A stretch of DNA of 64,000 bases from Ascidiella aspersa. Lineage: Eukaryota. The translations under genes and the position numbers were made by a program. The stretch covers positions 9,734,001-9,798,000 of the forward strand of contig OZ004608.1 of NCBI GenBank assembly GCA_963924565.1, written 5' to 3'. A model generated the notes under the pieces. The model was not told where the DNA came from, did not search any database, and was given only the letters and a program-made list of their open reading frames with translations. This document shows, one piece after another, positions 21,799 to 41,875 of the stretch; the first letter of the stretch is position 1, and each line of letters opens with the position of its first letter.

Positions 21799-23108
21799 TC
21801 ACTCGTTAGTCGAAATAATCTCGCTCAGGTCGGACCATACGTCGTCCAACGGCGGTATTGCTCTGGTGCGAGCAACCACGCTGCTCAGAGGCGGAATGTG
21901 GTGGAAAACGGTCGAGGCGGTGGCGGTAGGCACAGCGTAAACCGGCGCCACGCGGTTCGCAATTGTTTCCAGCCCAGCCAAGCTCACAGTCGAGTGCTTA
22001 CTAATCAGATGCGTGGGAATTTCATCTTGTACTTGCGGCGCTTTGTTGTACCCATTTAAAATAACCGGCTTTACTTCAACTGTTTCCCCATTGGTTGGCG
22101 CGTAAAGCCCGGAGGCGTGTGATTGGTCCTTGGTTCGGCGTCTGTTACGTGGCGGTGACGTCATTTCGGGTTCGTTGGAGGCGGCGGCGGCGTCGATGGC
22201 GTCGATCATGTTCAGGTCGTCGTCGTTGCTGCACCAGAATCGCCTTCGCTCCTCAAAGTCTCGCTTGCCGTCGAGGCAGTCGCGCAGGAACTGAATGTAG
22301 CGACTCGCCAGCTGTTACAAAGGACAAGGTTTACAGGATATAGGCTGCTGGAAAATCACGTGGACTTCTACTATGCTAGGTCATACCACTAGGGGTATTT
22401 TGTAAAATGTACCATTTCTGGAGCTTAAATCTCAAACAAAATTTTAGATGATTTGCTTTTATACTGGCCTCAGTTAAACGCTTTTTATTTTTTTATTTAA
22501 ACAGCAAAAAGATTTTATTCAAATGCGAAACCGTGAACGGTATTTAAAAAGAAATCACGTGAACGGTTGCCTACAAAATCTAATATAACTTTGAAAGCCT
22601 GAAATGTGAAATATGGCCAAGCTTTTCTGCCGTCCATTAAAAAAACAGCTTTAATGCCACTACACACCAAGTTACTCAAAATAATCTGTTAGAAAAAACA
22701 CTTTTGGGATTTGTAAAAATAATTTAGTTTTCATACAGTAAACATGCTTTTTCCCTGGCGTTAAAATAGCTTAGGCCGAAAGACTTCAAAGCACGTTAGT
22801 TCTTAATTAGTTGATATAATTTGCAACTACCGGACAAAATAGCTTGTAACATTCAACCATTGTAAGGCTATCTCTAAACAACTCACCTGAAGAGTTTGCT
22901 TTTTGTGCAACTTTCTTCCGGCCGGTAATCGAACTGGGATGACCTTTTGGAGCGATTCCAGAGATTCATTAAATACTCTAAGTCTCTCCCTTTCTCGAAC
23001 GGCAGCGTAGGGCTTCTTCGGGGGTTGGGACTTGAAAAAAGGCTCGTGGTAGATTTGAACAGAGTCCTCCTTTTTTGACTTTCTCCTACCGCCTTTTCGC
23101 GCTGGCAT
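21799..23108 (-). CDS. Divergent group-A bHLH transcription factor, cluster member E (~244 aa)
   Basis: Exons 23108-22887 and 22311-21799 (phase 0, GT-AG). Translation: AAVRERERLRVFNESLESLQKVIPVRLPAGRKLHKKQTLQ|LASRYIQFLRDCLDGKRDFEERRRFWC. Confidence 0.88.
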
Positions 23109-26100
23109 CTTAAAATTGATTTTAGTCGCGGCTTGACTGCTGATTTTAAACTTGAACTTGGAAGGTCTAGCTGGTAACGCTCACTTCTTGCAGTTTGTTC
23201 TTTGGTTCAAAATGGCTGAAACTGCTGGTTATCATTGACAGTTACACTTATTAGGTTTGATCTTTATCCAATAGCCTATTCAGGCTTTTTCTTTCACACA
23301 TATATTCAAACCAAACTAAAATTTGCTCTATATTGTATTTTCTGGACCAGCGGACTATATGTGAGCAATCAGCAAACGAACTTTAGTTAACTTCTTCATT
23401 TGAAATTAGTAAAACCGCAACTGGTAAAAGAAAAACGAGCTTGCCTAATGCGCTATACGCGCATGCCGAGCTTTCGCAGCCGTGGTAGGCGATTTAGGCC
23501 GTTGTAAGGATGTACAGTTTCCGTATTGCTTCACGCAAGCGCCAGCACTCGTTTCAAATCCATCACACAGCCGTTGCATGGAGTAACGGCGGTTCAAAGC
23601 GGTTTTACTGCGCTGGCGGATTGTTCAAGGTACAGCCTAAAAATAAGTGTTTACATTTTGTTGTGAGAACAAAAGCACTCAAAAACAATAGTGTACGAAT
23701 TTAATCTAATTTATTAAAGCTCCGCTAAATCTTAAAATTTATTAAATACACAACATGTTGTCTTTTTTGTTATAACTTTAACGGTAATTCAACAGTAACA
23801 ATGGTTATAGAAATTTGAGGTTTGTGAAACCAAGTTTAACATATTATGTTGTCTGCTGCTAAAAATTACGCTACTTGTGTGTACACTTTTGTAAACTCTA
23901 TTACTTTGGAAATTACTGTGTAACGTAAAAAAGGTTCTTCCATATAGGTCGTTAATACATAGCGGTACATTAAATTAGAATTTACTAAGTATTCGGGTAT
24001 TGTATTGAAGTACAATGGCGAGTTCCATCGTAGGTAATACAACTTAAGTTCCCAATTCTAATCTCTTTTTATTGTCTACACTTCGCAGTGAATTTGTATA
24101 ACAGCGTGATTATTTGCCCAGGTGAACAGCGCTGTGGAAGTTATAGTTGGACTACGGTTTAAAAAACCCGATCAATCTTTTTTGCCGCCGTCTATTTTAA
24201 ATCGGAAAAACACACAAAGGTCTTACGCAAATAAAAGCCAGCGATACGTACCACTGTCCGGCGGCTTGCGTTTTTGCACCTTTGCAATTCGCTGTTGCGA
24301 CGTTGTGGCGTATACGACTTAAAATATTTAATAACACACTTTTGACATTTTGTTTTTTAGGGAGGGGGTACGCTTTCGTGACAACTTTTGACTACTGTTT
24401 GTTAAAACAACCAATATGTGACTTTCCTTTCGAAAATGTCCTGCGTTGTTTATGTATCTATAAATGTATTCTTACTTACAAGTAGAATACATTTATAAAA
24501 AATCTAAAAAGAAAACACAAAAATCGTTTATAGTTTGTAAGACAAGCTGTGTTAAAAAACTTTATACTCAAAATTAACAGAAACATGTTTGTTTTATACT
24601 TTTCCGTTGCACTTTTATAGCGTGTTTGGCAAACACTGAGGTAAAATTATCTCACTTAAATCACACACGTGCGTCGTACGCTTAGCTTTTTGTTGCAAAT
24701 AACATGCGCGGCAAAAATTGCTAGGCAATACTGCCGTTAAATGTTATTACAGCGAATTAAGTTTTGCGTTAAGCACGGTAAACTTTCGCTATCCGGTAAA
24801 AACTGTTGCGTGAGAACGAATATTTGTCGAACTGTTAGTTTCCACTCCCAACAGGTCCGCGGGGAAATATTATTTTGTCGGTCCATGCATTGCTTCCTAA
24901 CGAAAACACCGTGTTGGTAATTCTTAAGTTCTCACGAAAACGTTATTTGTTTTTGGTTTTTGCAAAAGTAGCCGTGGGATACAAAATGCTAAACATTTTA
25001 AGTGTTACTGTACAAACATATCTAAAAATTAATGTTACAAAAAAACATAAGATATTTAATTCATCGTGTGAATAATATTGCGCAATTCGAGTAATCCTCT
25101 AAATAAGTTTCAGCGTAATGCAATAGCTTACATAAAACTTTTTTTAATGAAGTTGTGCTTTCTTTACCAATCTATTTGTAATATAGTAGAGATAAGCATG
25201 GAAAGAGTGCTTACGTATCACATTTAATGCCGTACTCGCATATTTTCAAATTAAAAAGTAGAAGTTCGGACAGTACAATTTAAATGAAATTCAATGTAAA
25301 GTCTAAAGATACGTACTTACCATATCAGATAATTCTCGATACTTCAATTAAAAAAAAAATATATATAAAGATGGTTTTAAAAAGAATACACCGTGATGCT
25401 GTCACACGAAATAGTCAAATATTACACTTTAGTGAAATTATACCGACTATATTCCAACACCAGTAAATTAAAAAATATTCCGTTCATTCTTCTTTTATAA
25501 ACATATACGATATTTCAGTTTTGAATTTGTGACAATATCGGTTTGGAGCCGATACCAAACGCCAAGTGGTATACCAGGGCGGTATCGGTGTCTATACGAT
25601 ACTAAATTGATATCGGAATTTTTTTAAGCTTTGCGATCCAACGAATCTATTCTAGTTTGAAATCAAAATTTATTAAAGAATATAATATAAATAACCACCG
25701 GGTGTAACTACATTTTTAACTTTTTGGTTTAATACCCTGGTATAAACATTAGCTTTATACGTTATTATTTAGTTTACTATGCTTGTTAGGGCATAGTAAT
25801 GAGCCGTTTGGTATCAAAGCGGATCGCGAAATTTTTTGGCCGAAAATATGAGGTATTCGAAAAAAATTAAGGAACGGACATCCCTAAATTCGATCATGTC
25901 CAATTTGCCCGTACACCAGCAAACCTAAAGGTAGATGATGGCGTATAGAAGCCGAGTGACGTGTCAAGTGCGAGATTTGTTGACCAACGCAGCAGGTGAT
26001 TGCGTCACGAGAGCAGTCGGCGCTTTCAAAGCTACGCCTCGTGCGTCCGACCCTGGTCCCGCAAAGAATCGAGTGCATAGGTGAGAACCCTGGAATAACT

Positions 26101-26918
26101 TCCGCCTTCCGGGCGTGACGTAAGCTCGCTCGAGCCCAATCAGCGATGAGACGAAACGAAATTTTCAGATGTGGTGTTATTTTTAAATTAAAAATTATTC
26201 CCCAATACACTTAATATTTTTCTTAACAATTGCGTTCTTTAAATTACAAAAATATATGTTTTAAAACAAGTTGTTATAGCCTATACACCATTTTAGATTT
26301 TTAATTTTAGAATTTCGTTTATGTTGCGAGTGTTTGAGAAGTCCGATAGATATGGCCAGCATATCAGTTAAGGTTTTTTTAAATAACGAAATTTTTTTTT
26401 TAAATACGTATATTATAACATGCTAGATTTTGAGTATACTATATTTGCCTCTAGAAGTCATAAATGCTACAGCGCAATATAGCAACGATATTCGAAGCTG
26501 TAAACCGCCGCCGGGTTAAAAAAATGATTTGCTACTTTTTCGAAAACGGAGACCCAGCGTTCCAACAGTTACATAAACAGCAAAACCCTGGGTAAACACA
26601 AGGATGAAAACAAAACCGGCGTCAGCAGCCCAGCGTAGGCAAACAGATCCACGGAAAATTTCCTCAAGGCGAAAGGCGGGCTTTTGAAAAGCGCCGCCGA
26701 CTGTAGGTCGGATGTCCACATTCAGCCCAGCATCCGACTCAAGCCTCATTGTCACTTGCCGCCCAGCAACCCTTGGGCCGGTCGCGCCTGGAGATGGCAC
26801 AGGGGCAGTCCGTCTGGGCCTTAACTCCCCCGGGCCGACGCTCTCCCCTCTTTGGGGGATATCTGGCCGGATATTGGGAGGCCGAAGAAAAAGTGCAAAC
26901 CCTGGCTGGGCAAAATCG

Positions 26919-26925
26919 TATAAAT
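26919..26925 (+). promoter_or_regulatory. Probable TATA box of bHLH gene D
   Basis: TATAAAT ~130 nt upstream of the ATG at 27049, at the 3' edge of a GC-rich island (~26600-26915). Confidence 0.5.
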
Positions 26926-27048
26926 GCCTCGCGCTTTCGATGAGAGGACACTATTCGATTTGAATCGACCAGCATCTAACATTGCATATAATTAAAGGTT
27001 TACGAATTTTGAGCCTTCTTACCGAAGTTAATATACTCTAAATCAAGA

Positions 27049-28877
27049 ATGTACGGCTTCGAATCGAATTCTTACCAGTCCGAGGATTTCTTTCAGGTAA
27101 GAAGACCTACAGTGTGTTTAGAATTACATTATCCTTTTATCGGTATTGCAAAATAACCGCTTGTTATTATCAAGACTATTTAATATAAAGATACCATTAT
27201 AAAATAACCTACAAATTTCGAAAAAAAAGCTTAACAGTTGGTAATTTTTTTTAAGCTTGGACCATGCGGTAGTAGTTTGTAGAATGTAGATGTATGTCGG
27301 CAAAATTCTATAATTTCAGTCCATGTTTGTGAAATGTATCGAAAATTTTGTTTACCCCTCCAACAAACCAAATCAAGTTCAATGCAGTTTAATAGCGAAC
27401 AAAAAATAAATGCAACTACTTACCTTACAGCATCAACCGGCAGCAAATAGCTCGGCAATGCGCGCATCTTCGAAACGCAAACTTGACTGTGACATCGGAC
27501 CCGGCGAATCGAGTGACGTCAGCAGTCAATGCAAGAAACGCCGATCCGGAGCGGCAGGGCGCGAGCGCGTCAGACTGCGTCAGTTCAACGAGGCCCTGGA
27601 AAGTCTGCAGAGCGCGATTCCGATCAGACTGACGCAGAATCGAAAGCTGCACAAAAAACAGACGCTTCAGGTAACTATTAGAGAGAGTCAATAGAGACGC
27701 GCCTTTCGTAACACAACATAGACGAGCGATTTCATTTGAGTTGTTACACATTTTATTTTTGTTAAGTACATACAAACCATCTGCCATTTTTATTGCCTGT
27801 TTAAATTGCGATTATACAATTAATATTTTATATTTAATTTTAAACTGCGATGCCTCGTTTATTCAATATATAGTAGTTGGTACAAAACGATTTATTTTCT
27901 TGATTAACAGTCAAATCTTGGCCCTATTTGATGTGTTAGATGAGGCTAAATACCTTCCGTATATGATTTAATACGCTTTGACACAGCGGGAAAAATATAA
28001 ATGCCACAATGTTGCGCCACGTTCGACAACTAAAAGATACATTGCTTATAAGTTACTTCACAATGAAAAAGTCAGTTAATTTATGGTGTACCTTTTTGGT
28101 TTTCAGCTGGCCATTCGTTATATTAACTTTCTTAACGGATGCCTGTCGGGAGAGCGCCAGTGGTCGGAGAGAAGCCGATTCTGGTGTAAGACAGAGGACG
28201 AGCTGATGATTGACGCCATCGACGCGGCAGGGGAGAGAAATGAACCCGATCCTCTACCGAACCAACTTCTTCAAGCAAGTACGCAGTTCACGCCCTACCA
28301 AGAACCAAGTCAACACATACATATCAATAAAGCAGATGAGCAACCGGGTTTCTTCCAACAAGGAGAGCATTACAATCACCTTCCTGTCCATCAATATTAT
28401 CATCATCAGCAGCAGCAGGAGATCAATGTAAGGCCTCAACAGCAACCCTTTCCTGCCATCTACGAGCCGCTGTCCCCTTACGAAAGCGAATCATCTTCGA
28501 ATGGAAGTCAAACCATGGCTCCGGCGCATTCCTATGATCACCAGCTTTACCAGAAACATGAGCTCTCGCCACAGGAGGTTCCCCAAATGGCATTCAACTA
28601 TTATCAGGTGCCACATTTTGTCCACCAAGAGCAAATATTCCCCAATTGCGATGTCTACCCACCAGCGCCGCGCGATCACTTTCAAAAGAGCCAAGTCCAG
28701 CAAACCTACGCAATTTACAATGCGCCAAAAGAGCAATGTTACAGTCACGACGCTCACACACAATCCAGTAATGGTGCCAACGCCGGCATCATGAATCTTC
28801 TTGCATCAGCGCAAGACGCTTTGAACCCCGAGAGTCCGGAAAGTGGATTCGTGTCGTCGGTTTCCTACGAAATGTAA
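27049..28877 (+). CDS. Divergent group-A bHLH transcription factor, cluster member D (~352 aa, Gln/Pro/His-rich C-terminus)
   Basis: Exons 27049-27096 (MYGFESNSYQSEDFFQ), 27431-27670 and 28107-28877, all phase 0. Translation: AAGRERVRLRQFNEALESLQSAIPIRLTQNRKLHKKQTLQ|LAIRYINFLNGCLSGERQWSERSRFWC. AATAAA at 28957. Confidence 0.88.
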
Positions 28878-30000
28878 GCGTGCAACGCCATTTTTCTTCT
28901 GTTACTATTTGTGATATTTATAAATTGTGATGTGCCTGCGCAAATCGCTTTGTAAAAATAAAATTTATAAATGTTATCGAATCGCTGTTTTTACATAAGT
29001 GACACAACCCATAGAATACATAATCACTTATTCCAAGGTAAAACTGTTATCTTGTTAAAAGGTTTTTCAAAATATATCAGTCCTTTAAGGATTTGCAGAT
29101 AAGGTTAGACCAGAAAAAATGCATACTAGAACCTTGCCCCCAGAATGATGGGTATCAAACAGCATATTTATGTATATGTTGTGTACAGATTAAGGCCGAT
29201 CAATGAGCTAAACTGAATAATAAAGTAAAAATGATAATAATAACACATATGTTTTATATTTTAGACTAGAATATTTTTTCATTTGCCTGCGACGCACAAC
29301 TTTCCATGGCGCACCGGTTAATAGGCACTGGCATAAAGTATAGATATAGACAGAACTAGCGCAATCTAAAATGCTAAAACATACATTACTGTACTGTCAA
29401 ATATGCCGAATATGATTTTTATTACACTTGACTGTCATCAATGTGAATAATATTGTTTTTTGGTGAACCATTGAATTTTTTACAAAATCTGTATCGTACA
29501 TTACACCCTATTATTTGTAACACCCGAGTTATTTAACAAGTAACATGTGAATTTATATATTTTATTCAGCACTTGAGCTGTACGCAAACGAGGGTATTCC
29601 AACAATTAGATAAGTTTAGCTTTTCTCTAGAATGTAAATTTGTTAACAGAATACAATACTAAACTTCGGTTTTCATAGACTACTTCTATACTAAACGCCT
29701 TGATTCCTTGTATTATGGGAGCAACTCTAGGCCTCAAGCGAAAGACGTTGATTAATTACATTCCAATTAAGACATTTGCGCTTTATTAATTGAAATGGCT
29801 GTATGCTCAAATTGTAGTTTTTATACGAATTTAGAACCTGTTGTTTATCATATTCTATTATTTAAGTAGAAGTTTTTCTCGTATGCAAAACAAAATGCAA
29901 CACAAGTTTAAGGGAAATTTTGGTGATCCCGCCTTTTCTTTCTATGTTCTATTTAAATCTGTAGTCATTTATGAACAATACACATTGTTCTAGCTTCTGA

Positions 30001-30230
30001 GCCTGCATAGCTCAGTTAGTAGAGCGACGGTCCCGGCTTGGCCGGAGGTCGTGAGTTCGAACCTCACTGCAGGCTAGTTGTTTTTCTAGTCTGCCCTGCT
30101 TGCATCATAGATCAACAGATTCGGTGAGTCTGCGATGGCTTTCGGTGTACTAATTATACGTAAGCCGTAGTCGTTGGTCAAAAAGCAACCTCGAAGGGCC
30201 AAATATCAGTTATTAACACACATATGTGTG
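30001..30230 (+). mobile_element. tRNA-derived SINE (tRNA-like head 30001-30075 plus ~155-nt body)
   Basis: 7-bp acceptor stem GCCTGCA/TGCAGGC, D arm GCTC..GAGC with A box TAGCTCAGTTAG, and T arm GTGAG-TTCGAAC-CTCAC (B box). The anticodon arm is non-canonical. The body recurs at 4156-4325. Confidence 0.78.
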
Positions 30231-30382
30231 AATGTTTCATTGAAAACATATTGTTATACACAAAATATTGATGACAGCCGTGGACTATTTTTGGTTGTAT
30301 TAAACATGCGAAAACGAGGTACCAAAAACAAACAAACGAACAAACAGTGGCGAAATAAAAACACTTAAAACTTCGCTAAAAA

Positions 30383-32324
30383 TCAAAAGTCAATTGAAGA
30401 GCCGAAACCGCTTTCTGGGCTCTCGGGCCCGCTGCTGCAGGCTTTTGGCGAAGCAATAATCGCCTCTAGGTAGCTAAACATGTCATCGACTGTCGTTTGT
30501 GATAATGCCGATTTGACGTTGTCCGCTTTTAGCGGAGATCCACAATTAAAATATGTGCCTCGAGGTGGCGACGTTGCGACAAGGTCTGTAACCGAAATTG
30601 AGTTCAAATCGTCGTCACAGACGGCGGCTTTCACAATAGGAAACGGGTCAAACTCAGTGAGTTGGTCAACCTTTATTGAAGTCATCAGGTTGAATTTACT
30701 TTTGACTGAAACAGACTCAGAATTGCTGGAGTCGTCACAACATGATACTGGACTTTCAATTGGAATCAAGCTTTTGCCGAGTTCCATCCAAGGTGTCGAG
30801 TTAAGGTCGCTGCAATCGCTGCTAACATTGAGGTTGGCAGCCGAAAACGAGCCGTCGCTTTCCAACTCTGGTTTTGGCAGCGAGCGAAAGTCATAGGCGA
30901 CTTTATTGTCTCGAAGCGGGATTACTTCAGTGCTTCTACCGCCAAAGTGGTGGAAGGTCAATTTTGCAGACTGCGATTCAAGCGGTTGGTCGCATTCAGG
31001 GAAATATTCTTGCTCGCGAGGTGTGCTGGGAATGTAATGGTCTACAGGCGACTGGCCTTTGTCGAAATTTAGGTTACCAACGCAACGCTCGTTGTCAGCG
31101 TTTTCTTTGATGCACGGGCGAGCGTGAAAATATGTAGCATCGTATGAGGGCTTTGGAAAACTTTGTTGGAACTTTATAGCCTCTTCGCGGGAATAAGGAC
31201 CACCTTGACCAAATGTACTGTCGACTTGATTGACCACGTCAACGGCTCTAGGATCCATGGTGTAAGTGTATCCTGGCACATTGTGCGTTTCCAACGGCTG
31301 TACAGGATCTGGTTGGCCCATTTCGGCGATGGCGGCGTCGGCGCCGACCGCTGCGGCGTCAATTGCGTCAATAGCGACGTTGTCTTCGCTCCGACACCAG
31401 AATCTGCTGCGTTCGCTGAAGTCTCGACTCCCGTCCAAGCAACCTCGAAGGAATTCGATGTAACGGATGGCGAGCTGAAAGTTGAAGAATAAATTCTTGT
31501 TTAGGGATTTTCGGCACGTACCTTATTGCGTTAGATTGACTGACTAACAAAACGCACATTTTCCGTAAGATTAAATGACCCATGTGCGTTGTCTAATGCT
31601 TTATTGCGTTAAAAAAACAAGATCTTTAGAAACAGTATGATTACTTAGCTATAGTCATGAAGGAAATACTTTTGTAATTAAGAATTGTATGATACATATT
31701 TTTTAATTTCTATTTAATAATTAATTCTATATGTTCAATTCATTACTTAATTTTGCTCATTAAGCTATCTCTATAACATTGTGCTGATCTATGGTGAATC
31801 ATATGTTCGCTATTTACCTGGAGAGTTTTCTTTTTGTGGATTTTTCTGTTGTCGGTCAGTCGGATTGGAAGTACACCTTGCAGGGATTCTAGGGCGCCGT
31901 TAAAATCCTTGAGTCTCTGACGTTCTTTACCAGCTGCTTCCTTGCGACGGCGTTTTGGTTTAGGTGCTTCCCCGCATGGTGACTGCCTTTTCTTCGAGTT
32001 AAATTCATTCAACTGATTCTGAAAAAAATAACGTTTAAATTAGGATATTTAAGACACCCCACCAAATAGATATATGATAAACAAGTAGGTAAGTTATTCA
32101 GTGAAAGATTGGCAATCAACTTGTTTTTCAGGATTCTTTGGAAAATATCCCACTTATTTACAATTACAGTGTACATTAGTAAACAAAGTTGTAATCCATA
32201 GAAGACTTATGTTGAATACTTATAAACCTACCTCTTCGTGGTTATACGATGTATGGCTTGCATTGGCGATTTGGAGAAACTCTTCCAAGTTGTAGCTTTT
32301 AGGGGCATAATGCAGAGTCGTCAT
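30383..32324 (-). CDS. Divergent group-A bHLH transcription factor, triplicate copy A (~461 aa)
   Basis: Exons 32324-32232 (MTTLHYAP..NHEE), 32018-31818 and 31474-30383. Translation: AAGKERQRLKDFNGALESLQGVLPIRLTDNRKIHKKKTLQ|LAIRYIEFLRGCLDGSRDFSERSRFWC. Confidence 0.88.
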
Positions 32325-32399
32325 GATTCTACTGTACACTTGAAACACTTTTAGACTTGCAACAACGGTAAAGCAACAGAAGCGAATGATCAACTTTCG

Positions 32400-32730
32400 A
32401 TACCCGTGTGCATTTAAAGGCAGCACTTTCCATTTTTTTCGGCTGAGGACTTGGGTAAACACGGCAACGGCGCCAGGCCCCTGCCCAGGCCGTCACGAAC
32501 TCCGGCGCCGTCGCATGCAGCAAAGCTAGAGAGGGCAAACGCTGAAAGCCTTCCATTTCCGACTTTGGCGGCGACTTGAATCGCGTCGCCCGCTACTCGA
32601 CAAACTTCGATTGAAACACGGGAAGGCTTAGACGTGGCGTGTAGAGAGTCTGCGTCAGTCGGCCCCTACCTGGATCGCGCTTTGGGCGGTGGACAAACAG
32701 TCGCTTTCCGACTCAGCTTTCATTGTTTTA
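32400..32730 (-). promoter_or_regulatory. Conserved proximal promoter of bHLH copy A (paralogs ~36890-37240 and ~41950-42300)
   Basis: GC-rich non-coding block that is nearly identical in all three units, ending in a TTTAAA TATA-like element just upstream of the 5' UTR. Confidence 0.6.
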
Positions 32731-33309
32731 ATGGTGTGAGGCCTGGAATGAGGCAAAATATAATCGCCAAATGGCGTTTGTATTTTTGATTGATGTATTT
32801 ATTTCGATTAACAACGTTTTGTTGGTTAATTTGAAGTCTTTGTTTCAAATTGTTTCAGGATGTGATGAAAATGAACTGTTGTAAAACAACATTTTTCCCT
32901 GTTTAATATTATGCTAGATTAAACACGGGCAAAACATACAGGATAGCTCTGATCAATTGCTCCTATTATTGCATTTGATTGTGGAATTCTTTGGAATCCT
33001 GTAGAGTGTAGATGCACATATTAAAAAAAGTTTTTTATTGACACAATGTATAGCTTATTTGATAGGTGTGGCTTTGATGACCGTTTCAGTTTCACTAAAA
33101 CTCTAAAAACACTTATTTTTTTATTCCATTTTAACATTATCACACTTAAACACTGATATATTATTGAGTGTAGGGAATTTGGAAAATTACTAAACTGTTT
33201 TGTAAAAAACAAACATTGCGTAGTGAAATCATACGTTTGGTATGTTACATAAGAGTTCAGAATTCAGAACGTTAAAAAATAGCAGGGTAAAAAAATATCG
33301 GACCAATTT

Positions 33310-33610
33310 TAAACCGCATTTGTGATGCCACGCCGAGAACACGCGTGGCACACGAATCAAAATGTTGACATTATAAATTAAACGTGGCGGGAGACGTTCT
33401 TTGTTTGCACAGCAAGGTCAGCCAAGTTGAAGGCAGTGGTCAGATCCGCGACCAATTTCATTGTTTGCTTTGTGCAGAAGTCGCGCAGCGAAAGTAACTA
33501 TATACGCAATAAACCACGCGACCAAGTTAGGGGTGAACACGTTATCCACACCTTGGTCGTGGCAGACAATTTTGTATAAGCTTTCACGCACGTCAGATGA
33601 CAAGACGCGT
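33310..33610. promoter_or_regulatory. Conserved distal non-coding block, candidate enhancer (paralogs ~38255-38545 and ~42738-43030)
   Basis: High identity across the three units (ggtcagatccgcgaccaatttcattgtttgcttt; ggggtgaacacgttatccacac), while the sequence between it and the promoter has diverged. Confidence 0.55.
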
Positions 33611-34862
33611 TTTTGTGACTGCCAGTAGGAAAAACTGTAAAGCTGTTTGCTTGCTGCGGGGTAAGTTTAAGTTTTTAAGTTGCGATAGAAAGTATTCAGT
33701 GCTTGGAAGTAATGTTTCGTTTAAACCAAGCATCTCGGTTAGTTGAGGCTTAAAGTATTTTTTGACCTGCAAATTTACCAAACCAACACCGTAAAGCTGC
33801 ATGTAAACTTTCGACACGAAATCCAACCGGAATCGTTGTAATCTCTGGTAATGCTATAGCTTTACAAACTCCTAACAAAAGTACACAAAATATACAATGT
33901 AGAATACGACTTCAAAACGGTGGACCTATACTTGTACTACATTTTTGTTTAACGTCAACTAAACACAACCTTCATATAAAACGGCTGTTTTATATCTAAC
34001 AGACAAATTTGTTGAAATTAATAAGTTTGGAAATTTCAAAACTCTCAAACCTAAGTTCAATTGCACCAAACTATATTTAGTTAAATTACCAGGCTATGAC
34101 TGTAGTTACGTGTCCATCGATTCGCCATTTTTAGGAGGCTGCAAATTCATTTTTTTTTACGATGCTTTAATTTATAGATGAACAGAGAATTTCCTTAAGT
34201 TACTTTACCTCTTGTAAAAAGAAATTCTTACATGTTTTAAAATGCAAGTATTTACCAGCAGCAAAAGTTGATAATTGTGTTAACAACAAAACTTATTATT
34301 CCACCATACACGAATTTTTATCTCAATATTAAAATCATTCATAGCAGAGCATCACCTAATTAAAAGCTAATTAGGCTGTATATGCAATGAAAACTATTTA
34401 TTTGAAATAAAGTCCGAGTCATGTTAATGACGTTTGTTTGCAGTAACCCGTAAAGCATCATTCAAGTCTTTCCAATACGCAAGTTGAGTCAGTGTAATTC
34501 GAATAGTAATTGACTTGTTTTTCAAGGCATTGTCTAACTCTCCGGTCTTACGAAGTACCAAATACAAACCAACTATTTTATAACCACTGTACTGTCTGAA
34601 CTTTATGCTTCACACAGGATTTTCTATCGCTATGGTCAAAATGTAATCCTGCTTTTTTTCATTAAACGAACTTGCTATCCTTATCTTTTTTCAAATCACT
34701 TATAGAAGTTACACTTAACTTTTAATAATAATTAGGACAATCATTTAGACGTATATCAAATTTAATGTTTTTTATTGTATTAAATATAAAACAATACGGA
34801 GGCAAAAAATAACAAAAATTTCAAGCGACTATCAAACGAAAACAAAAATGACGCTGTAAAAA

Positions 34863-36814
34863 TTAAAAGCCAATTGAAGAGCCGAAACCGCTTTCTGGGC
34901 TCTCAGGTCCACTGCTGCAAGCTTTTGGCGAAGCATTGATCGCCTCTAGGTAGCTCATTATCTCGTCAACTTTTGTTTGTTGGAATGGCGAATTACCGTT
35001 AAGGGACGAGTCGTCGGCCTCTACCGGAGATCCACCATTAAAATATTTTCCACAAGGTGGCGACGTTGCGACTAGGTATGTGACTGAAATTGAGTTCAAA
35101 TCGTCATCGCATGCTGCGGCTTCCACAACGGGAAAAGGATCAAATTTGGTGAGTTGGTCAACCTGAATAGAAGTCATCAGGTTAAATTTACTTTTGACTG
35201 AAACAGACTCAGAATCGCTGGAGTCGTCACAACATGATACGGGACTTTCATTTGGAATCAAGTTTTTGCCGAGTTCCATCAAATGAATCGAGTTAAGGTC
35301 GCTGCGATCGCTGCTAACATTGAGGTTGGCAGCCGAAAACGAGTCGTCGCTTCCCAACTCTGGTTTTGGCAGCAAGCGAAAGTCATAGGCGACTTTATTG
35401 TCTCGAAGCGGGATTACATCAGTGCTTCTACCGCCAATGTGTTGAACAGTCAATTTTGCAGGCTGCGATTCAAGCGGTTGGTCGCATACAGGGATATATT
35501 CTTGCTCGCGATGTGTGCTGGGAATGTAATGGTCTACAGGCGAATGGCCTTTGTCGAAATTTAGGTTACCAACGCAACGCTCGTTGGCAGCGTTTTCTTT
35601 GATGCAGGGGCGAGCGTGAAAATATGAAGCATCGTATGAGGGAGTTGGGAAACCTTGCTGGAATTTTATAGTATCTTCGCGGGAATAAGCAGCACCTTGG
35701 CCAAGTGTACTGTCGACTTGATTGACCACGTTAACGGCTCTAGGATCCATGGTGTAAGTGTATCCTGGCACATTGTGCGTTTCCAACGGCTGTACAGGAT
35801 CTGGTTGGCCCATTTCGGCGATGGCGGCGTCGGCGCCGACCGCTGCGGCGTCAATTGCGTCAATGGCGATGCTGTCTTCGCTCCGACACCAGAATCTGCT
35901 GCGTTCGCTGAAGTCTCGACTCCCGTCCAAGCAACCTCGAAGGAATTCGATGTAACGGATGGCGAGCTGGAAGTTGAAGAATAAATGCTTGTTTAAGGAT
36001 TTTCGGCAAGTACCTTATTGCGTTAGATTGACTGACTAACAACACGCACATTTTCCGTAAGATTAAATGACCCATGTGCGTTGTCTAATGCTTTATTGCG
36101 TTAAAAAAACAAGATCTTTAGAAACAGTATGATTACTTAACTATAGTCATGAAGGAAATACTTTTGTAATTGAGAATTGTATGATACATATTTTTTAATT
36201 TATATTTAATAATTAATTCCATATGTTCAATTCATTACTTAATTTTGCTCATTAAGCTATCTCTATAACATTGTGCTGATCTATGGTGAATCATATGTTC
36301 GCTATTTACCTGGAGAGTTTTCTTTTTGTGCATTTTTCTGTTGTCGGTGAGTCGGATTGGAAGTACACCTTGCAGGGATTCGAGGGCGCCGTTAAAATCC
36401 TTGAGTCTCTGACGTTCTTTACCAGCTGCTTCCTTGCGACGGCGTTTTGGCTTAGGTGCTTCCCCGCATGGTGACTGCCTTTTCTTCGAATTAAATTCAT
36501 TCAACTGATTTTGAAAACACCCGTTTAAATTAGGATATTTTAGACACCCCACCAAATAAATATATGATAAACAAGTAGGTAAGTTATTTAGTGAAAGGTT
36601 GGCAAGCAACTCGTATTTCAGGATTATTTGGAAAATATCCCACTTATTTACATTTACAGTATATATTAGTAAACAAAGTTGTAATCTATAGAAGACTAAT
36701 GTTAAATACTTATAAACGTACCTCGTCGTGGTTATACGTTCTATGGCTTTCACTGGCGATTTTGAGAAACTCTTCCAAGTTGTAACTTTCAGGAGCATAG
36801 TGCAGAGTCGTCAT
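34863..36814 (-). CDS. Divergent group-A bHLH transcription factor, triplicate copy B (~463 aa)
   Basis: Exons 36814-36722, 36504-36310 and 35966-34863, with an intact ORF. Exon 2 uses a downstream AG because the acceptor seen in copies A and C is mutated to AA. Confidence 0.82.
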
Positions 36815-37482
36815 GATTCTATTGCACACTTGAAACACTTTTAGACTTGCAACAACAGTAAAGCAACAGATGCGAATGATCAACTTTCGACACCCGTGTG
36901 CATTTAAAGGCAGCACTTTCCATTTTTTTTCGGCTGATGACTTGGGCAAACACGGCAACGGCGCCAGGCCCCTGCCCAGGCCGCCACGGACTCCGGCGCC
37001 GTCGCATGCAGCAAAACTAGAGAGGGCAAACGCTGCAAGCCGCTCGCTGGCCTTCCATTTCCGACTTTGGCGGCGACTTGAATCGCGTCGCCCGCTACTT
37101 GGCAAACTTCGATCGAAACACGGGAAGGCTTAGACGTGGCGTGTAGAGAGCCGGCGTCAGTCGGCCCATACCTGGATCGCGCTTTGGACGGGACGCAAGC
37201 GCTGTGGACAAACAGTCGCTTTCCGACTTAGCTTTTATTGTTTTACCGCTACAATGCCTGGATAGTGGCAAAAAATAACCGACAAATGACGTTTATACGG
37301 TTGGTTGATGAATTTATTTCGAATCAAACGTTTTTTGGTTATTTTGAGTCTTTGTTTTCCTTGTTTCAGAATTTGATAAAAACGAACGTTTGTAAAACAA
37401 AATTTCCTATATTTGAAACAAATTGCTGTCCCAAACATTTTTATTAAAGTTAGACCGGTGCAGTCTATCAGGTTTCTTAGTC

Positions 37483-38078
37483 CAGTGGTTCCCAACGCAT
37501 GGGTCGCGACTCAAAGTTGGGTCGCCTTAATATTTTTTTGGGTCGCTTGTTTTTAGGCATAACATTTCTTGAACGAAAAGATTACAATAAAAAGGTTTAA
37601 AACATGAAGAGATCTCAAAACTGGAAATTTAAATAGAAGTCACGAAGCGTTTTATGTCGAGACATCGGAAAGCTTTCTAGCATGTTCGTAGTGCAATAAC
37701 ATTTAACAGTTTTCCTTTTACTTATTGTTATTATAATATTATTATTATTATTGTTATTGCTGAGTGACCTATATTTAAATTAATTATTAGGCTTGCGAAA
37801 AATGGCAAAACGATCATACAATAAAGACGGTAGTTGAAGCCGACATGCGGCTATATCCCAAAAACTCATTGACAGCAAGCGAGCACAGCTATCTCATTAG
37901 TGATTTAATAAATATATTATTTTCGAAAAAAGTTACTGCTTTTGTAGTGCAGTTTGTTTGTAACGCAATCTTGTATAGCTTTAAAAATATTACGACAATT
38001 TGCTTGGGACGCAAGATTTTACCGCACTGAATTTTTCTTATAAAATGGGTCGCCTTAAAAACGTGTTGGGAACCACTG
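37483..38078. mobile_element. hAT-type MITE present only in triplicate unit B
   Basis: TIRs cagtggttcccaac ... gttgggaaccactg with internal tgggtcgc repeats. Absent from the corresponding positions of units A and C. Confidence 0.75.
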
Positions 38079-39901
38079 TTTTAGAGCAACGGCTTTGGTG
38101 AACGCGAATAATTTTTATAAGCAATAACTCAACTAAAACTTGACAAAAACGCAATGTATAGCACCAACATGTTTTACGTGCAAAACTTTAATAAACCGAT
38201 ATTTATGAAAACTTATTAAATGAAAGCACTTCATTTGAACCCAAGTGATTTGACACTATGCCGCATGTATGATGTCACGCCGGGAAGACGCGTGACACAC
38301 GAATCAAAATGTTGACATTGTAAATTAAACGTGACGGGAGACGTTCTTTGTTTGAACAGCAAGATCAGCCAAGTTAAAGGCAGTTGGTCAGATCCGCGAC
38401 CAATTTCATTGTTTGCTTTCTGCAAAAGTCGCGCAGCTAAAGTAATACGCAATGAAGCACGCGACCAGTTTGGGGTGAACACGTTATCCACACCTTGGTC
38501 GCGGCAGACAATCTTGTATAAGCTTTTACGCACGTCAAATAACAAGAAGCGTTTTTGGGAAACCAAGTAAGAAAAACTGTAGATAGGTTTGGATGTGTAT
38601 AAGTTTGAAAGTTTTGCAGCAGTTCGATAAGTGTAATGATAATTGAGTTGCGAGATAAAGTATCCAGTGCTTGGAAAATGTCTCTTGTTTGAGCCAAGCA
38701 TCTCGGTTAGTTGAAGCTTAAAATGTTTTTATCCCGCACATTTACCTAAACAACAACGTAAAGCTATATGTAAATTTTCGAACTGAAATCTAACCAGAAT
38801 CGTTGCACAAGGACAGCAACCTTTAACGCACCTCCTCTAAAAATTATACCGACGATGCATAGTCGCTCAACCGTTTTGCTAATCATGCTTTTTCTCATAA
38901 TTCTTTAGGTTTAAACAAAATTACATAAAACCTAACAAAGTACACCAAACTGCACATTGTAGAATGCTTTAACTTTAAAAAGATAGGTCTACACTTTTGT
39001 TATATTTTCTTGACCTCAACTGAAAATTATTCATATAAAAAGACTGCTTTATGTGTAATCTAACTGACAAACTTTGGTGAAATCAAATTATTGAGTTCAA
39101 AAAATCCTTAACTCTCAAACCCTAACTCATCTGTATAAAACTTTATTTTTTAGTTACATTAGTAGCTTATGGCTGCAGTTATGTGTCCATCGGTCCTACA
39201 TTTTTATGTGGTTACGAATTCATTTGTTATTTTTACGATGTTTAATTTATAGATCAAAGGAGATTTTCCTGAAGTTTCTAACCTCCTCTAAAACAAATTT
39301 TAAGTTGATAATTATGTTAACAACAAAACTTGCTTTTCCACCATATTAGTATTATTATACCCATAATTAAAAATATTTATAGCTGAGCATCTCTAGATTA
39401 AATACTAATTAATCAATGCATGCAATGAAAACTATTTATTTGAACTAAAGTCTGAATCACGTCAATGACGTTTGGCTTGCAGTAACACGTCAAGATTGAT
39501 TCAAGTATTTCCAATACGCAAGTTGAGTCAGTATAGTTCGAATAATAATTGACTTGTTTTTCCAGGCATTGTTTTAACTCTCCGAAGAAGTAACTACAAA
39601 CCAAATATTTCATAACCATTGTACCGCCTAAACCTTATATTTTACATTGGATTTTCTATAGCTGTGGTCAAAAATGTAATCCCGTCTTTTTTTCGTTGAA
39701 CGAATTTGCTATCCTTATCTTTTTTCAAATCACTCATATAAGTTATACTTAACTTTCATCAATATTTAGGACTATCATTTAGAAATATGTCAAATGTTAA
39801 TGTTTTCAATTGTATTAAACATAGAACAGTAAGAAAGAGCGAAAAAGAACAAATACATCAACGCCACTACAAAATGAAAACAAAACTTAACGCTTTAAAA
39901 A

Positions 39902-41875
39902 TTAAAACTCGGTCAAAGAGCCGAAACCGCTTTCTGGACTCTCAGGTCCACTGCTGCAGGCTTTTGGCGAAGCAATAATCGCCTCTAGGTAACTAAACAT
40001 CTCGTCAACTTTTGTTTGTCGGAATGGCGAATTACTGTTAAGGGACGAGTCGTCCGCCTCTAGCGTAGATCCACAAATAAAATTTAGGCCGCGAGGTGGC
40101 GACGTTGCGACGAGGTCTGTGACCGAAATTGAGTTCAAATCGTCGACGCAAACTGCGGCTTCCGCAACAGGAAAAGGATCAAATTCAATGAGTTGTTCAA
40201 CCTCAATTGAAGTAATTAGGTTGAACTTGCTGTTGGCTGAAACAGATCCAGAATCGCTGGAGTCGTCACAACATGATACGGGACTTTCATTTGGAATCAA
40301 GTTTTTACAGACTTCCATCAAAGGTATTGAGCTAAGGTCGCTGCAATCCTTGCTAACATTGAGGTTGGCAGCCGAAAACGAGCCGTCGCTTTCCAACTCT
40401 GGTTTTGGCAGCGAGCGAAAGTCATAGACGACTTTACTGTCTCGAAGCGGTATTACATCAGTGCTTCTACCGCCAAAGTGGTGGACGGTCAATTTTGCAG
40501 ACTGCGATTCAAGCGGTTGGTTGCATACAGGGAAATATTCTTGCTCGCGATGTGTGCTGGGAATGTAATGGTCTACAGGCGACTGGCCTTTGTCGAAATT
40601 TAGGTTACCATCGCAACGCTCGTTCTCAGCGCTTTCATTGATGCAGGGGCGAGCGTGAAAATATGTAGCATCGTATAAGGGCTTTGGGAAACTTTGCTGG
40701 AACTTCATAGTATCTTCGCGGGAATAAGCAGCACGTTGGCCAAGTGTACTGAAACAGTCGACTGGATTACCCATGTTAACGGCTCTAGGATCCATGGGGT
40801 AAGTGTATCCTGACACATTGTACGTATCCAACGGCTGTACAGGATCTGGTTGGCCTTTGTCATCGATGGCGGCGTCGGCACCGACCGCTGCGGCGTCAAT
40901 TGCGTCAATAGCGATGTTGTCTTCGCTCCGACACCAGAATCTGCTGCGTTCGCTGAAGTCTCGACTCCCGTCCAAGCAACCTCGAAGAAATTCGATGTAA
41001 CGGATGGCGAGCTGGAAGTTGAAGAATAAATGCTTGTTTAGGGATTTTCGGCACGTACCTCATTGCGTTAGATTGACTGACTAACAAAACGCACCTTTTT
41101 GCGTAAGATTAAAGGATCAGATGTGTTTGTCTAATGCTTTGTAGCGCAATGATTTAAAAAGCAATGTATACTTAGAAACAGGATGACCACTTAACTATAG
41201 TCAGGAAGGAAATATCTTTCTATTAGAGAATAGTAGAATACATATTTAATTTACTATAACTCTGTTTATTTTCTACTTATTAATTAAATCTACCGTGTTC
41301 ACTCCTTCGCATAATTTTGTCCAATAAACTGTCTACAACATTTTTGATTGGAATCATGTGTTCGCTATTTACCTGGAGAGTTTTCTTTTTGTGGATTTTT
41401 CTGTTGTCGGTAAGTCGGATTGGAAGTACACCTTGCAGGGATTCGAGGGCGCCATTAAAATCCCTGAGTCTCTGACGTTCTTTACCAGCTGCTTCCTTGC
41501 GACGGCGTTTTGGTTTAGGTGCTTCCCCGCATGGTGACTGCCTTTTCTTCGAGTTAAATTCATTAAGATGATTCTGAAAAAATCAGTTTTTATTAGAATG
41601 TTTTAGACATACCACCAGATAGATATATGATAAACAAGTAGGTAAGTTATTCAGTGAAAGATTGGCAAGCAACTTGTTTTTCAGGATTCTTTGGAAAATA
41701 TCCCACTTATTTACATTTACAGTATATTAGTAAAAAAGTTGTAATTATTAAAAAATTGTACATGCGAGTAATATAAACCTACCTCTTCGTGGTTATACGC
41801 TGTATGGCTTGTACTTGCGCTTTGAGGAAACCTTACATAGCCGTAACTTCCAGGAGCATAATGCAGAGTCGTCAT
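39902..41875 (-). CDS. Divergent group-A bHLH transcription factor, triplicate copy C (~467 aa)
   Basis: Exons 41875-41783, 41573-41373 and 41011-39902. All phase 0, canonical splice sites, intact ORF. Confidence 0.88.

What the first reader, a model, noticed from the sequence alone, without database searches (positions are those of the whole stretch)
21799..41875. Five-gene cluster of an atypical bHLH family
Seen: five genes share one bHLH type, an identical phase-0 intron inside helix 2 (TLQ|LA) and deviations from group-A consensus. There is no Asn before the ERxR basic motif (AAG[RK]ER, AAVRER), helix 1 reads FNxAL (FNESL in E) instead of LNxAF, and the loop/helix-2 reads K[LIM]HKK[QK]TL instead of KLSKxxTL. 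Arrangement: E(-) and D(+) are head-to-head, D is convergent with A, and A/B/C are tandem. Known: tunicates carry lineage-specific bHLH genes, and LAIRYI plus the missing Asn recall Mesp/mesogenin. Inference: a locally expanded, possibly undescribed developmental TF family with both old (D, E) and young (A-C) duplicates.
Basis: partly seen in the sequence, partly recalled or inferred. Interest (0 to 1): 0.8.

Follow-up and report, generated by a model that had tools for sequence, protein, structure and literature searches.

The report
Sea-squirt Twist-like bHLH gene cluster
The five clustered genes are real, but they belong to the ascidian "Twist-like" (Twist-r) family of mesenchyme regulators known from Ciona since 2003, here enlarged by a recent local triplication, so this is a new instance of a known family.

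Summary
Five intact bHLH genes lie at 21.8-41.9 kb. The "undescribed family" reading is not supported. Every supposedly atypical feature is shared with Ciona Twist-like1b, Phallusia Twist-like1a, C. savignyi "Kotato" and relatives in Clavelina and Styela. The shared features are AAG[KR]ER, FNxAL, KLHKKQTLQ|LAIRYI, the ERxRFWC...IDAIDAA motif after the bHLH, and the C-terminal PESPESGF.

- Gene E is the Twist-like2/Kotato-type copy.
- Gene D is the Twist-like1-type copy, sister to Phallusia Twist-like1a.
- Genes A-C are a recent tandem triplication (86-91% DNA identity, dS about 0.17) of a second Twist-like1-type gene. The bHLH is under purifying selection (dN/dS 0.1-0.2).

The genome holds only these five copies and no canonical Twist. 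In Ciona robusta the three family members carry consecutive gene-model numbers on chromosome 5, so a cluster is likely already on record there.

Transcription could not be tested, because no RNA runs exist.

One residual point of novelty remains. The family groups (100/100) with an amphioxus orphan bHLH and a jellyfish gene, so it may be older than tunicates.

The parts
22887..23108 (-). Gene E exon 1 (74 aa): start codon, basic region, helix 1, loop and the start of helix 2, up to TLQ
   Evidence: ORF. Donor CAG|GTGAGT. Pfam HLH E 1.5e-5. Groups with the Twist-like2/Kotato clade at 86/80.
21799..22311 (-). Gene E exon 2 (170 aa plus stop): LASRYIQFL, the motif after the bHLH, and the Twist-like2-type C-terminus DDVWSDLSEIISTNE
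   Evidence: Acceptor ACAG|CTG. 70% identity over 46 aa to C. savignyi Kotato. The C-terminal motif is shared with the Clavelina Twist-like2-type protein (E 5e-5).
27410..27670 (+). Gene D exon 1 (87 aa): start codon through TLQ of helix 2
   Evidence: Pfam HLH E 2.9e-6. 68% identity to Phallusia Twist-like1a.
28107..28877 (+). Gene D exon 2 (256 aa plus stop): LAIRYINFL, the motif after the bHLH, a Q-rich disordered region, and the C-terminal NPESPESGFVSSVSYEM
   Evidence: Sister to Phallusia Twist-like1a at 97/97*.
32232..32324 (-). Gene A first coding exon (31 aa, MTTLHYAP...)
   Evidence: Conserved ORF and GT donor in all three paralogues. Resembles the Ciona Twist-like1b N-terminus MTSLQYEQ. 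No RNA evidence.
31818..32018 (-). Gene A bHLH exon (67 aa)
30383..31474 (-). Gene A last exon (363 aa plus stop)
36722..36814 (-). Gene B first coding exon (31 aa)
36310..36504 (-). Gene B bHLH exon (65 aa). The acceptor is shifted 6 nt downstream relative to A and C, and stays in frame.
34863..35966 (-). Gene B last exon (367 aa plus stop)
41783..41875 (-). Gene C first coding exon (31 aa)
41373..41573 (-). Gene C bHLH exon (67 aa)
39902..41011 (-). Gene C last exon (369 aa plus stop)

Best explanation
This is the Twist-like (Twist-r) bHLH gene cluster of an ascidian.

- Gene E is the Twist-like2 / Twist-r.c / 'Kotato'-type member.
- Gene D is the Twist-like1 / Twist-r.a/b-type member.
- Genes A-C are a recent tandem triplication of a second Twist-like1-type gene. 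That gene had already separated from D before this lineage split from Phallusia.

By analogy with Ciona (inferred, not shown here), the proteins are group-A bHLH factors. They would pair with the E-protein Tcf3, bind E-boxes through the retained Glu/Arg of the basic region, and act downstream of FGF and Hand-r. They would specify larval mesenchyme and trunk lateral cells, with the Twist-like1 type switching on the Twist-like2 type.

What is shown: the gene structures, family membership, subtype assignment, copy number, age order of the duplications, and purifying selection on the bHLH. What is inferred: expression, partners, targets and roles.
For: Homologues and shared features:
- The closest proteins are Ciona intestinalis twist-like1b, five C. 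savignyi paralogues, Phallusia Twist-like1a and Clavelina proteins.
- Alignment shows that they share every 'atypical' feature. These are AAG[KR]ER, FNxAL, RKLHKKQTLQLAIRYINFL, RDWxERNRFWC...IDAID and the C-terminal PESPESG[YF].

Reach of the family:
- A full HMMER scan of 1.84 billion proteins gave 26 clusters at E<1e-10 (all but two tandem-domain Ptf1a-like proteins are family members). After that came a flat background of generic bHLH hits near 45-50 bits.
- Named members include Ciona F7B554/NP_001071844, C. savignyi 'orphan bHLH Kotato' and three Styela clava proteins.

Trees:
- E groups with the Twist-like2/Kotato clade at 86/80. This placement is not rejected on exon 2, p-AU 0.25. E shares the Twist-like2-type C-terminus VWxD[IL]xEII.
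- D plus Phallusia Twist-like1a has 97/97* support, and A-C form one clade at 98/95*.

Copy number and age:
- The genome has five copies, all in this window.
- The tandem units are 86-91% identical.
- dN/dS is 0.09-0.19 in the bHLH exon and 0.38-0.54 in the last exon. All ORFs and splice sites are intact.

Literature:
- Ciona has three Twist-like genes expressed in mesenchyme and trunk lateral cells, with gene models KY.Chr5.355/356/357 (PMC7693978).
- Twist-like1 specifies mesenchyme and activates Twist-like2 (PMC5703972, bioRxiv 10.1101/2022.05.16.492211).
Against: - There is no expression evidence for any of the five genes. No RNA run holds the locus, and the two runs that were laid are genomic contigs.
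- Placement of E with Twist-like2 has only moderate support on about 45 columns.
- The name 'Twist-like2' for Ciona F7B554 is my inference. It is the only Ciona intestinalis family member left after the two Twist-like1 copies. It is not a label given by the database.
- Adjacency of the Ciona genes is inferred from consecutive gene-model numbers.
- The trees for the window genes therefore rest on the two exon parts separately.
Confidence: 0.9

Rival explanations
1. A previously undescribed, lineage-specific bHLH family, perhaps related to Mesp/mesogenin.
For: - Pfam recognises only a generic HLH.
- The last exons have no Pfam family.
- The family is well separated from all other bHLH proteins by a long branch.
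Against: - Named and functionally studied members exist in Ciona, C. savignyi and Phallusia with the same diagnostic motifs (PMC7693978, PMC5703972).
- Ciona has its own single Mesp gene (PMC7693978).
- The nearest solved structure is TWIST1, followed by NeuroD1 and TAL1.
Confidence: 0.03
2. A-C, or some of them, are untranscribed or decaying duplicates, and only D and E are working genes.
For: - There is no RNA evidence at all.
- dN/dS in the long last exon is 0.38-0.54, which indicates relaxed constraint.
- B has lost the acceptor AG used by A and C.
- C's first exon differs at several residues.
Against: - All three keep open frames of 461-467 codons and all GT/AG sites.
- dN/dS is 0.09-0.19 in the bHLH exon. 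Only 1-2 replacements occur in the first 45 codons of the last exon, and the C-terminal PESPESGF is conserved.
- B's alternative AG keeps the frame.
- About 0.4-0.6 kb upstream of each start codon is part of the duplicated unit.
Confidence: 0.12
3. The genes are fast-evolving true orthologues of Twist. On this view the grouping with amphioxus and jellyfish orphan genes is long-branch attraction.
For: - The genome has no canonical Twist. A Twist query finds Hand best, at 50% identity.
- TWIST1 is the best solved match to the family profile, E 1.4e-8.
- Twist is the nearest neighbour of the clade in the best tree, at 74/99.9.
- The genes play a mesenchyme role like Twist (PMC7693978).
Against: - A clade of tunicate genes plus Twist that leaves out the amphioxus and jellyfish genes is disfavoured, p-AU 0.017.
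- The loop is two residues longer than in TWIST1.
- The C-termini carry PESPESGF or VWxDLxEII, with no WR/Twist-box-like motif seen by inspection. The definition of that motif comes from general knowledge.
- Best human BLAST hits reported for Twist-r.a/b are ATOH1, NEUROD6, PTF1A and NEUROG2 rather than TWIST (PMC7693978, Table 1).
Confidence: 0.3

Closest known systems
Ciona Twist-like1a/b (Twist-r.a / Twist-r.b) and Phallusia mammillata Twist-like1a
   Same: - Same bHLH signature, same motif after the bHLH (ERNRFWC...IDAID) and same C-terminal PESPESG[YF].
- D is 68-87% identical to Phallusia Twist-like1a in the conserved parts and is its sister at 97/97*.
- A-C fall on the same side of the family tree.
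- The genes are multi-copy and clustered in Ciona too (PMC7693978).
   Different: - A-C have an extra 5' coding exon.
- A-C have a much longer last exon of about 365 aa, so the proteins are 461-467 aa against 277-306 aa.
- A-C differ in the bHLH itself, with K[IM]HKKKTL, DFNGAL and RDF in place of RDW.
- They are a separate, species- or lineage-level triplication that is independent of the Ciona duplications.
Ciona Twist-like2 (Twist-r.c) / C. savignyi orphan bHLH 'Kotato'
   Same: - E shares AA[IV]RERERL, FN[ED]SLE.LQKVIP and ERRRFWC.
- E shares the one-residue insertion in D[ED]DLNMI[ED]AIDAAA.
- E shares the C-terminal VW.D[IL].[ED]II motif.
- E lies next to a Twist-like1-type gene, as the Ciona gene-model numbering suggests (PMC7693978).
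   Different: - E has PYAAV where the others have PNAAI, so the Asn five residues before the Glu is lost.
- E reads LASRYI against LACRYI.
- The assignment rests on about 45-column trees (86/80) plus motifs.
Bona fide Twist (human TWIST1, insect Twist)
   Same: - Both are group-A bHLH factors with a role in mesenchyme.
- TWIST1 is the best solved-structure match.
- Twist is the nearest neighbour in the best tree.
   Different: - The match to TWIST1 is only 38 bits and has a two-residue loop gap.
- There is no Asn in the ANxRER position.
- No WR/Twist-box-like C-terminus is present.
- A helix-2 intron is present.
- A 100/100 split separates the family from Twist.
Amphioxus orphan bHLH (B. floridae LOC118412441; B. 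belcheri Bbelb_191640; auto-named 'FERD3L' in B. lanceolatum) and a jellyfish (Sanderia) bHLH
   Same: - They share RPNAA.[KR]ERERL.VFN.A...LQ and KK..L..A.RYIK[FY]L in the bHLH.
- They group with the tunicate family at 100/100* against 35 other group-A bHLH proteins.
   Different: - They have no motif after the bHLH and no PESPESGF tail.
- Their HMMER score, 50.7 bits, is no better than that of generic bHLH proteins.
- Their branches are long and they sit nested inside the tunicate clade, which suggests attraction. Tunicate monophyly is not rejected (p 0.24).

Membership tests
Ascidian Twist-like / Twist-r family | bHLH domain (Pfam PF00010) | tested here: met
   All five exon-1 pieces match at E 3e-6 to 4e-5, above the gathering score.
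Ascidian Twist-like / Twist-r family | Family-specific bHLH signature: A[AGIV][KR]ERxRLxxFNx[AS]L...LQ..[IL]P[IV]RL....RK[LIM]HKK[QK]TLQ-LA.RYI.FL | tested here: met
   Alignments of the window exons with proteins from Ciona, Phallusia, Clavelina and Styela.
Ascidian Twist-like / Twist-r family | Conserved motif right after helix 2: C[LM].G.R[DQ][WF]..R.RFWC ... [IM].AIDAA | tested here: met
   Present in A-E and in all full-length family members, including Styela.
Ascidian Twist-like / Twist-r family | Subtype C-terminal motifs: Twist-like1 type ...SP....PESPESG[YF]; Twist-like2 type VW.D[IL].[ED]II | tested here: met
   A-D end in PESPESGF. E ends in VWSDLSEIISTNE.
Ascidian Twist-like / Twist-r family | Placement inside the clade in a phylogeny | tested here: met
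   Family clade at SH-aLRT 97 and 100/99. D plus Phallusia Twist-like1a at 97/97*, and A-C at 98/95*. The exon parts were analysed separately.
Ascidian Twist-like / Twist-r family | Phase-0 intron after TLQ in helix 2 | tested here: met
   Seen in all five window genes. In other species, the 11 exon-1-only family ORFs printed and one more fragment aligned run on as T[LIV][QKRE]V (that is, GT), and exon-2-only ORFs start at [LM]A.RYI. Genomic DNA of the annotated Ciona genes could not be fetched.
Ascidian Twist-like / Twist-r family | Twist-like1-type and Twist-like2-type genes adjacent in the genome | tested here: met
   In the window, E and D are head-to-head and 4.3 kb apart. For Ciona this is known only from the consecutive gene models KY.Chr5.355-357 (PMC7693978). 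For C. savignyi it is suggested only by consecutive UniProt accessions H2ZP87-91.
Ascidian Twist-like / Twist-r family | Expression in mesenchyme and trunk lateral cells, downstream of FGF and Hand-r | not testable with these tools
   No RNA run holds the locus.
Bona fide Twist | Highly conserved Twist bHLH with a short loop (...IPTLPSDKLSKIQTLKLA.RYIDFL) | tested here: not met
   The family profile matches TWIST1 at 38 bits with a two-residue loop gap. A 100/100 split separates the family from Twist. The best hit in this genome to a Twist query is Hand, at 50%.
Bona fide Twist | C-terminal WR motif / Twist box (definition from general knowledge) | tested here: not met
   The C-termini read ...PESPESGF... 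or ...VWSDLSEIISTNE. This was by inspection only.
Mesp / mesogenin | Grouping with Mesp bHLH domains | not tested
   No named Mesp reference could be obtained from the tools. Indirect evidence: Ciona has a separate single Mesp (PMC7693978), and TWIST1, NeuroD1 and TAL1 are the best solved matches.
Delilah | Grouping with insect Delilah bHLH | tested here: inconclusive
   The Atlas feature search puts both Ciona Twist-like2 and the amphioxus orphan nearest 'delilah-like' clusters at 0.91-0.92 (a lead only). In the tree, fly Delilah (P0141, named) lies across the 100/100 split. Delilah as the neighbour of the clade is not rejected, p 0.395.

The most novel reading that the evidence does not exclude
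On this reading the ascidian 'Twist-like' genes are neither tunicate inventions nor diverged Twist. They would be the tunicate branch of an older, unnamed eumetazoan bHLH family that also includes an amphioxus orphan (LOC118412441 and its orthologues) and a jellyfish gene. Vertebrates would have lost this family. Tunicates would have lost canonical Twist and used this family for mesenchyme. Within the family, A-C would be a new, structurally distinct subtype with an extra exon and a long tail that evolves quickly.
Probability: 0.25. Interest if true: 0.5.

Novelty: new member of a known kind. Interest (0 to 1): 0.25.

Why it matters
Twist-like1 is the key switch for larval mesenchyme in Ciona, the tissue that gives rise to blood, tunic cells and body-wall muscle. 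A species with five copies instead of three, including a young triplet with a conserved DNA-binding part and a tail that changes quickly, is a useful natural case for studying how duplicated master regulators divide or change their roles. It does not change what is known about the family. The possible link to amphioxus and cnidarian orphan genes bears on a modest open question: whether tunicates have a real Twist at all.

Tried and rejected
- **Expression.** No RNA run holds the locus. The two runs laid are genomic contigs and show no splice joints. Transcription is therefore untested.
- **Joining exons.** This was left out. Every search, alignment and tree used exon pieces or proteins already annotated in other species. 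As a result, no single tree covers the complete bHLH of the window genes.
- **Structure.** The AlphaFold2 model of Phallusia Twist-like1a with the family alignment gave confident helices for the bHLH only. The motif after the bHLH forms short helices at pLDDT 60-70 and the rest is disordered. I judged a fold search pointless.
- **ESM Atlas.** The first query was not held. The two that ran gave 'delilah-like' as the nearest named cluster for both the amphioxus orphan and Ciona Twist-like2. The tree did not confirm this.
- **Word-indexed search from the amphioxus protein.** It found only amphioxus orthologues.
- **Literature search for an explicit description of the Ciona cluster.** It found only the gene-model table in PMC7693978.
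Full report
**What is in the sequence**

A six-frame motif scan and ORF listing find five copies of one bHLH type between 21.8 and 41.9 kb, and nowhere else in the window. In each copy the reading frame ends ...HKK[QK]TLQ directly before GTRA, and resumes after a YAG as LA[IS]RYI.FL. This is one and the same phase-0 GT-AG intron inside helix 2.

Pfam HLH matches each first piece above its gathering score, at E 3e-6 to 4e-5. Each match breaks off at profile position 43 of 53, which fits the intron.

A-C also have a 93-bp upstream coding exon (MTTLHYAP...). Its ORF, GT donor and downstream acceptor are conserved, so these are three-exon genes. In B the acceptor AG used by A and C is CAA, and the next AG, six bases on, keeps the frame.

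**What the genes are**

The last exon of gene A finds Ciona intestinalis "twist-like1b" and C. savignyi bHLH proteins. Searching with the conserved part of twist-like1b adds a second C. intestinalis copy, five C. savignyi copies, Phallusia mammillata "Twist-like1a" and two Clavelina proteins.

- no Asn in the ANxRER position (AAG[KR]ER)
- FNxAL
- RKLHKKQTLQLAIRYINFL
- a strongly conserved motif right after helix 2 (RDWxERNRFWC....IDAID)
- a C-terminal PESPESG[YF]

A profile of these ten proteins, run with HMMER against 1.84 billion representative proteins, gives 26 clusters below 1e-10. All of them are family members except two Ptf1a-like proteins with tandem bHLH domains. After that comes a flat background of generic bHLH proteins at 45-50 bits.

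Cluster look-ups name further members:
- Ciona F7B554/NP_001071844
- C. savignyi "orphan basic helix-loop-helix factor Kotato"
- one more Clavelina protein
- three Styela clava proteins

Ciona is reported to have exactly three Twist-like genes, and the two Twist-like1 copies have the same bHLH (PMC7693978). I therefore take F7B554 to be Twist-like2 (Twist-r.c). That step is my inference.

**Which copy is which**

The operators asked that exons not be joined, so I analysed the exon-1-encoded part (46 columns) and the exon-2-encoded part (43 columns) separately.

- On exon 1, E falls with the Clavelina, Ciona and Kotato proteins of the Twist-like2 type at 86/80. D sits with Phallusia Twist-like1a, and A-C form one group on the Twist-like1 side.
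- On exon 2, D plus Phallusia Twist-like1a has 97/97* support and A-C have 98/95*. E with the Twist-like2 type is not rejected, at p-AU 0.25.

Motifs settle E:
- It shares ERRRFWC.
- It shares the one-residue insertion in DLNMI[DE]AIDAAA with Kotato (70% identity over 46 residues).
- It shares the Twist-like2-type C-terminus VW.D[IL].EII.

A-D instead end in PESPESGF.

D groups with the Phallusia gene to the exclusion of A-C. The split between D and the ancestor of A-C is therefore older than the split between this species and Phallusia.

**The triplication**

- The A, B and C units are 86-91% identical over 2.4-3.2 kb, including 0.4-0.6 kb upstream of the start codons.
- Synonymous divergence is about 0.16-0.18 in the last exon.
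- dN/dS is 0.09-0.19 in the bHLH exon and 0.38-0.54 in the last exon. Almost no replacements occur in the motif after the bHLH.
- All frames and splice sites are intact.

This pattern suggests working genes with a constrained DNA-binding and dimerisation part and a tail that evolves quickly. The tail is predicted to be disordered in the AlphaFold2 model of the Phallusia orthologue.

The genome (308.6 Mb, 75 contigs) contains only these five copies.

**How it most likely works (inferred from Ciona)**

In Ciona, Twist-like1 (Twist-r.a/b) is the key specifier of mesenchyme. It is expressed in the A7.6, B7.7 and B8.5 lineages, lies downstream of Hand-r, activates Twist-like2 and Myc, and is needed for mesodermal tissues of the juvenile (PMC5703972; PMC7693978; bioRxiv 10.1101/2022.05.16.492211).

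The window proteins keep the basic-region Glu and Arg residues that read the E-box, and they keep the HLH core. The likely mechanism is therefore heterodimerisation with the E-protein and binding to E-boxes. None of this could be tested here. No RNA run holds the locus, and the two runs that were laid are genomic contigs.

**Relation to other bHLH families**

Among solved structures the family profile matches TWIST1 best (1.4e-8, 38 bits, with a two-residue loop gap). NeuroD1, TAL1 and Myf5/MyoD follow.

I built a careful tree of 15 full-length tunicate members, 35 diverse group-A bHLH proteins from the HMMER list, three amphioxus proteins and two cnidarian-type proteins. The outgroup included an ant Twist, a fly Delilah and Ptf1a-like proteins, named. 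The tunicate genes group with the amphioxus and jellyfish genes at 100/100*.

AU tests:
- Tunicates plus Twist, without the amphioxus and jellyfish genes, is disfavoured (p 0.017).
- Twist is the nearest neighbour of the whole clade in the best tree (74/99.9).
- Delilah as neighbour is not rejected (p 0.395).
- Tunicate monophyly is not rejected (p 0.24).

Caveats:
- The alignment has only 58 columns.
- The amphioxus and jellyfish branches are long.
- The outgroup lacks several families (Mesp, Hand, SCL, NSCL, Figalpha, Paraxis, MyoR).

A Twist query against the window's own genome finds Hand best, at 50% identity. There is therefore no canonical Twist here, which agrees with what is reported for Ciona.

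**Verdict**

The interpretation as a new family is not.

This is the Twist-like/Twist-r cluster of another ascidian. Judged by the D gene, Phallusia is the closest sequenced relative. The cluster holds one Twist-like2-type gene, one Twist-like1-type gene and a young triplet of a second Twist-like1-type gene.

The modest novelty lies in two places. One is the triplet, with its extra exon, long tail and altered loop (K[IM]HKKKTL). The other is the unresolved possibility that the family is older than tunicates.

- The look-up of encoding contigs
- the first Atlas query

Noticed in passing
window 30001-30075 (+), wider 29992-30365: A tRNA-like sequence (Rfam tRNA, 51 bits) heads a very high-copy element. 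Summed contig depth there is 10^5-10^6, against about 50-200 in the flanks. This is probably a tRNA-derived SINE. It sits directly 3' of gene A's stop codon and abuts the edge of the A/B/C duplicated unit (30367/30377).
   Followed up: partly
window 36496-36517 (-): In gene B the acceptor CAG used by A and C for the bHLH exon reads CAA. The next AG, 6 nt downstream, keeps the frame, so B would lack two codons (NQ).
   Followed up: partly
window 27374-29991: One of the two genomic runs (X2) has no contigs at 95% identity or more over the whole of gene D and its 3' flank, while X1 covers it. This could be a divergent haplotype or individual, or an assembly gap.
   Followed up: no
window 31562-31796: One genomic contig of run X1 skips 233 bp inside the helix-2 intron of gene A. 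This is probably an allele or paralogue with a shorter intron, not a splice event.
   Followed up: no
G000:C8:2270312-2270476 (L008) and G000:C5:33848899-33849078 (L009): The best matches in the genome to a Twist query are a Hand-type bHLH (...[26 protein letters not shown]) and a second Hand-related gene. No canonical Twist was found.
   Followed up: partly
P0041/P0183/P0184 (amphioxus), P0080 (Sanderia jellyfish), P0071: A conserved amphioxus orphan bHLH and a jellyfish bHLH group with the tunicate Twist-like family at 100/100* in a 58-column tree. The amphioxus protein has been auto-named 'mediator of DNA damage checkpoint protein 1-like' or 'FERD3L'. This may mark an older family, or it may be long-branch attraction.
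   Followed up: partly
window 56162-56596 (-) and 59669-60004 (-); 46355-46804 (+) and 51449-51898 (+): Wnt-family exons and fibronectin type III exons flank the cluster on the right (Pfam E 4.5e-12, 7e-6; 1e-5, 2e-6). The 302-aa ORF at 313-1221 has no Pfam match. These could serve as synteny markers against the Ciona chromosome 5 locus.
   Followed up: no
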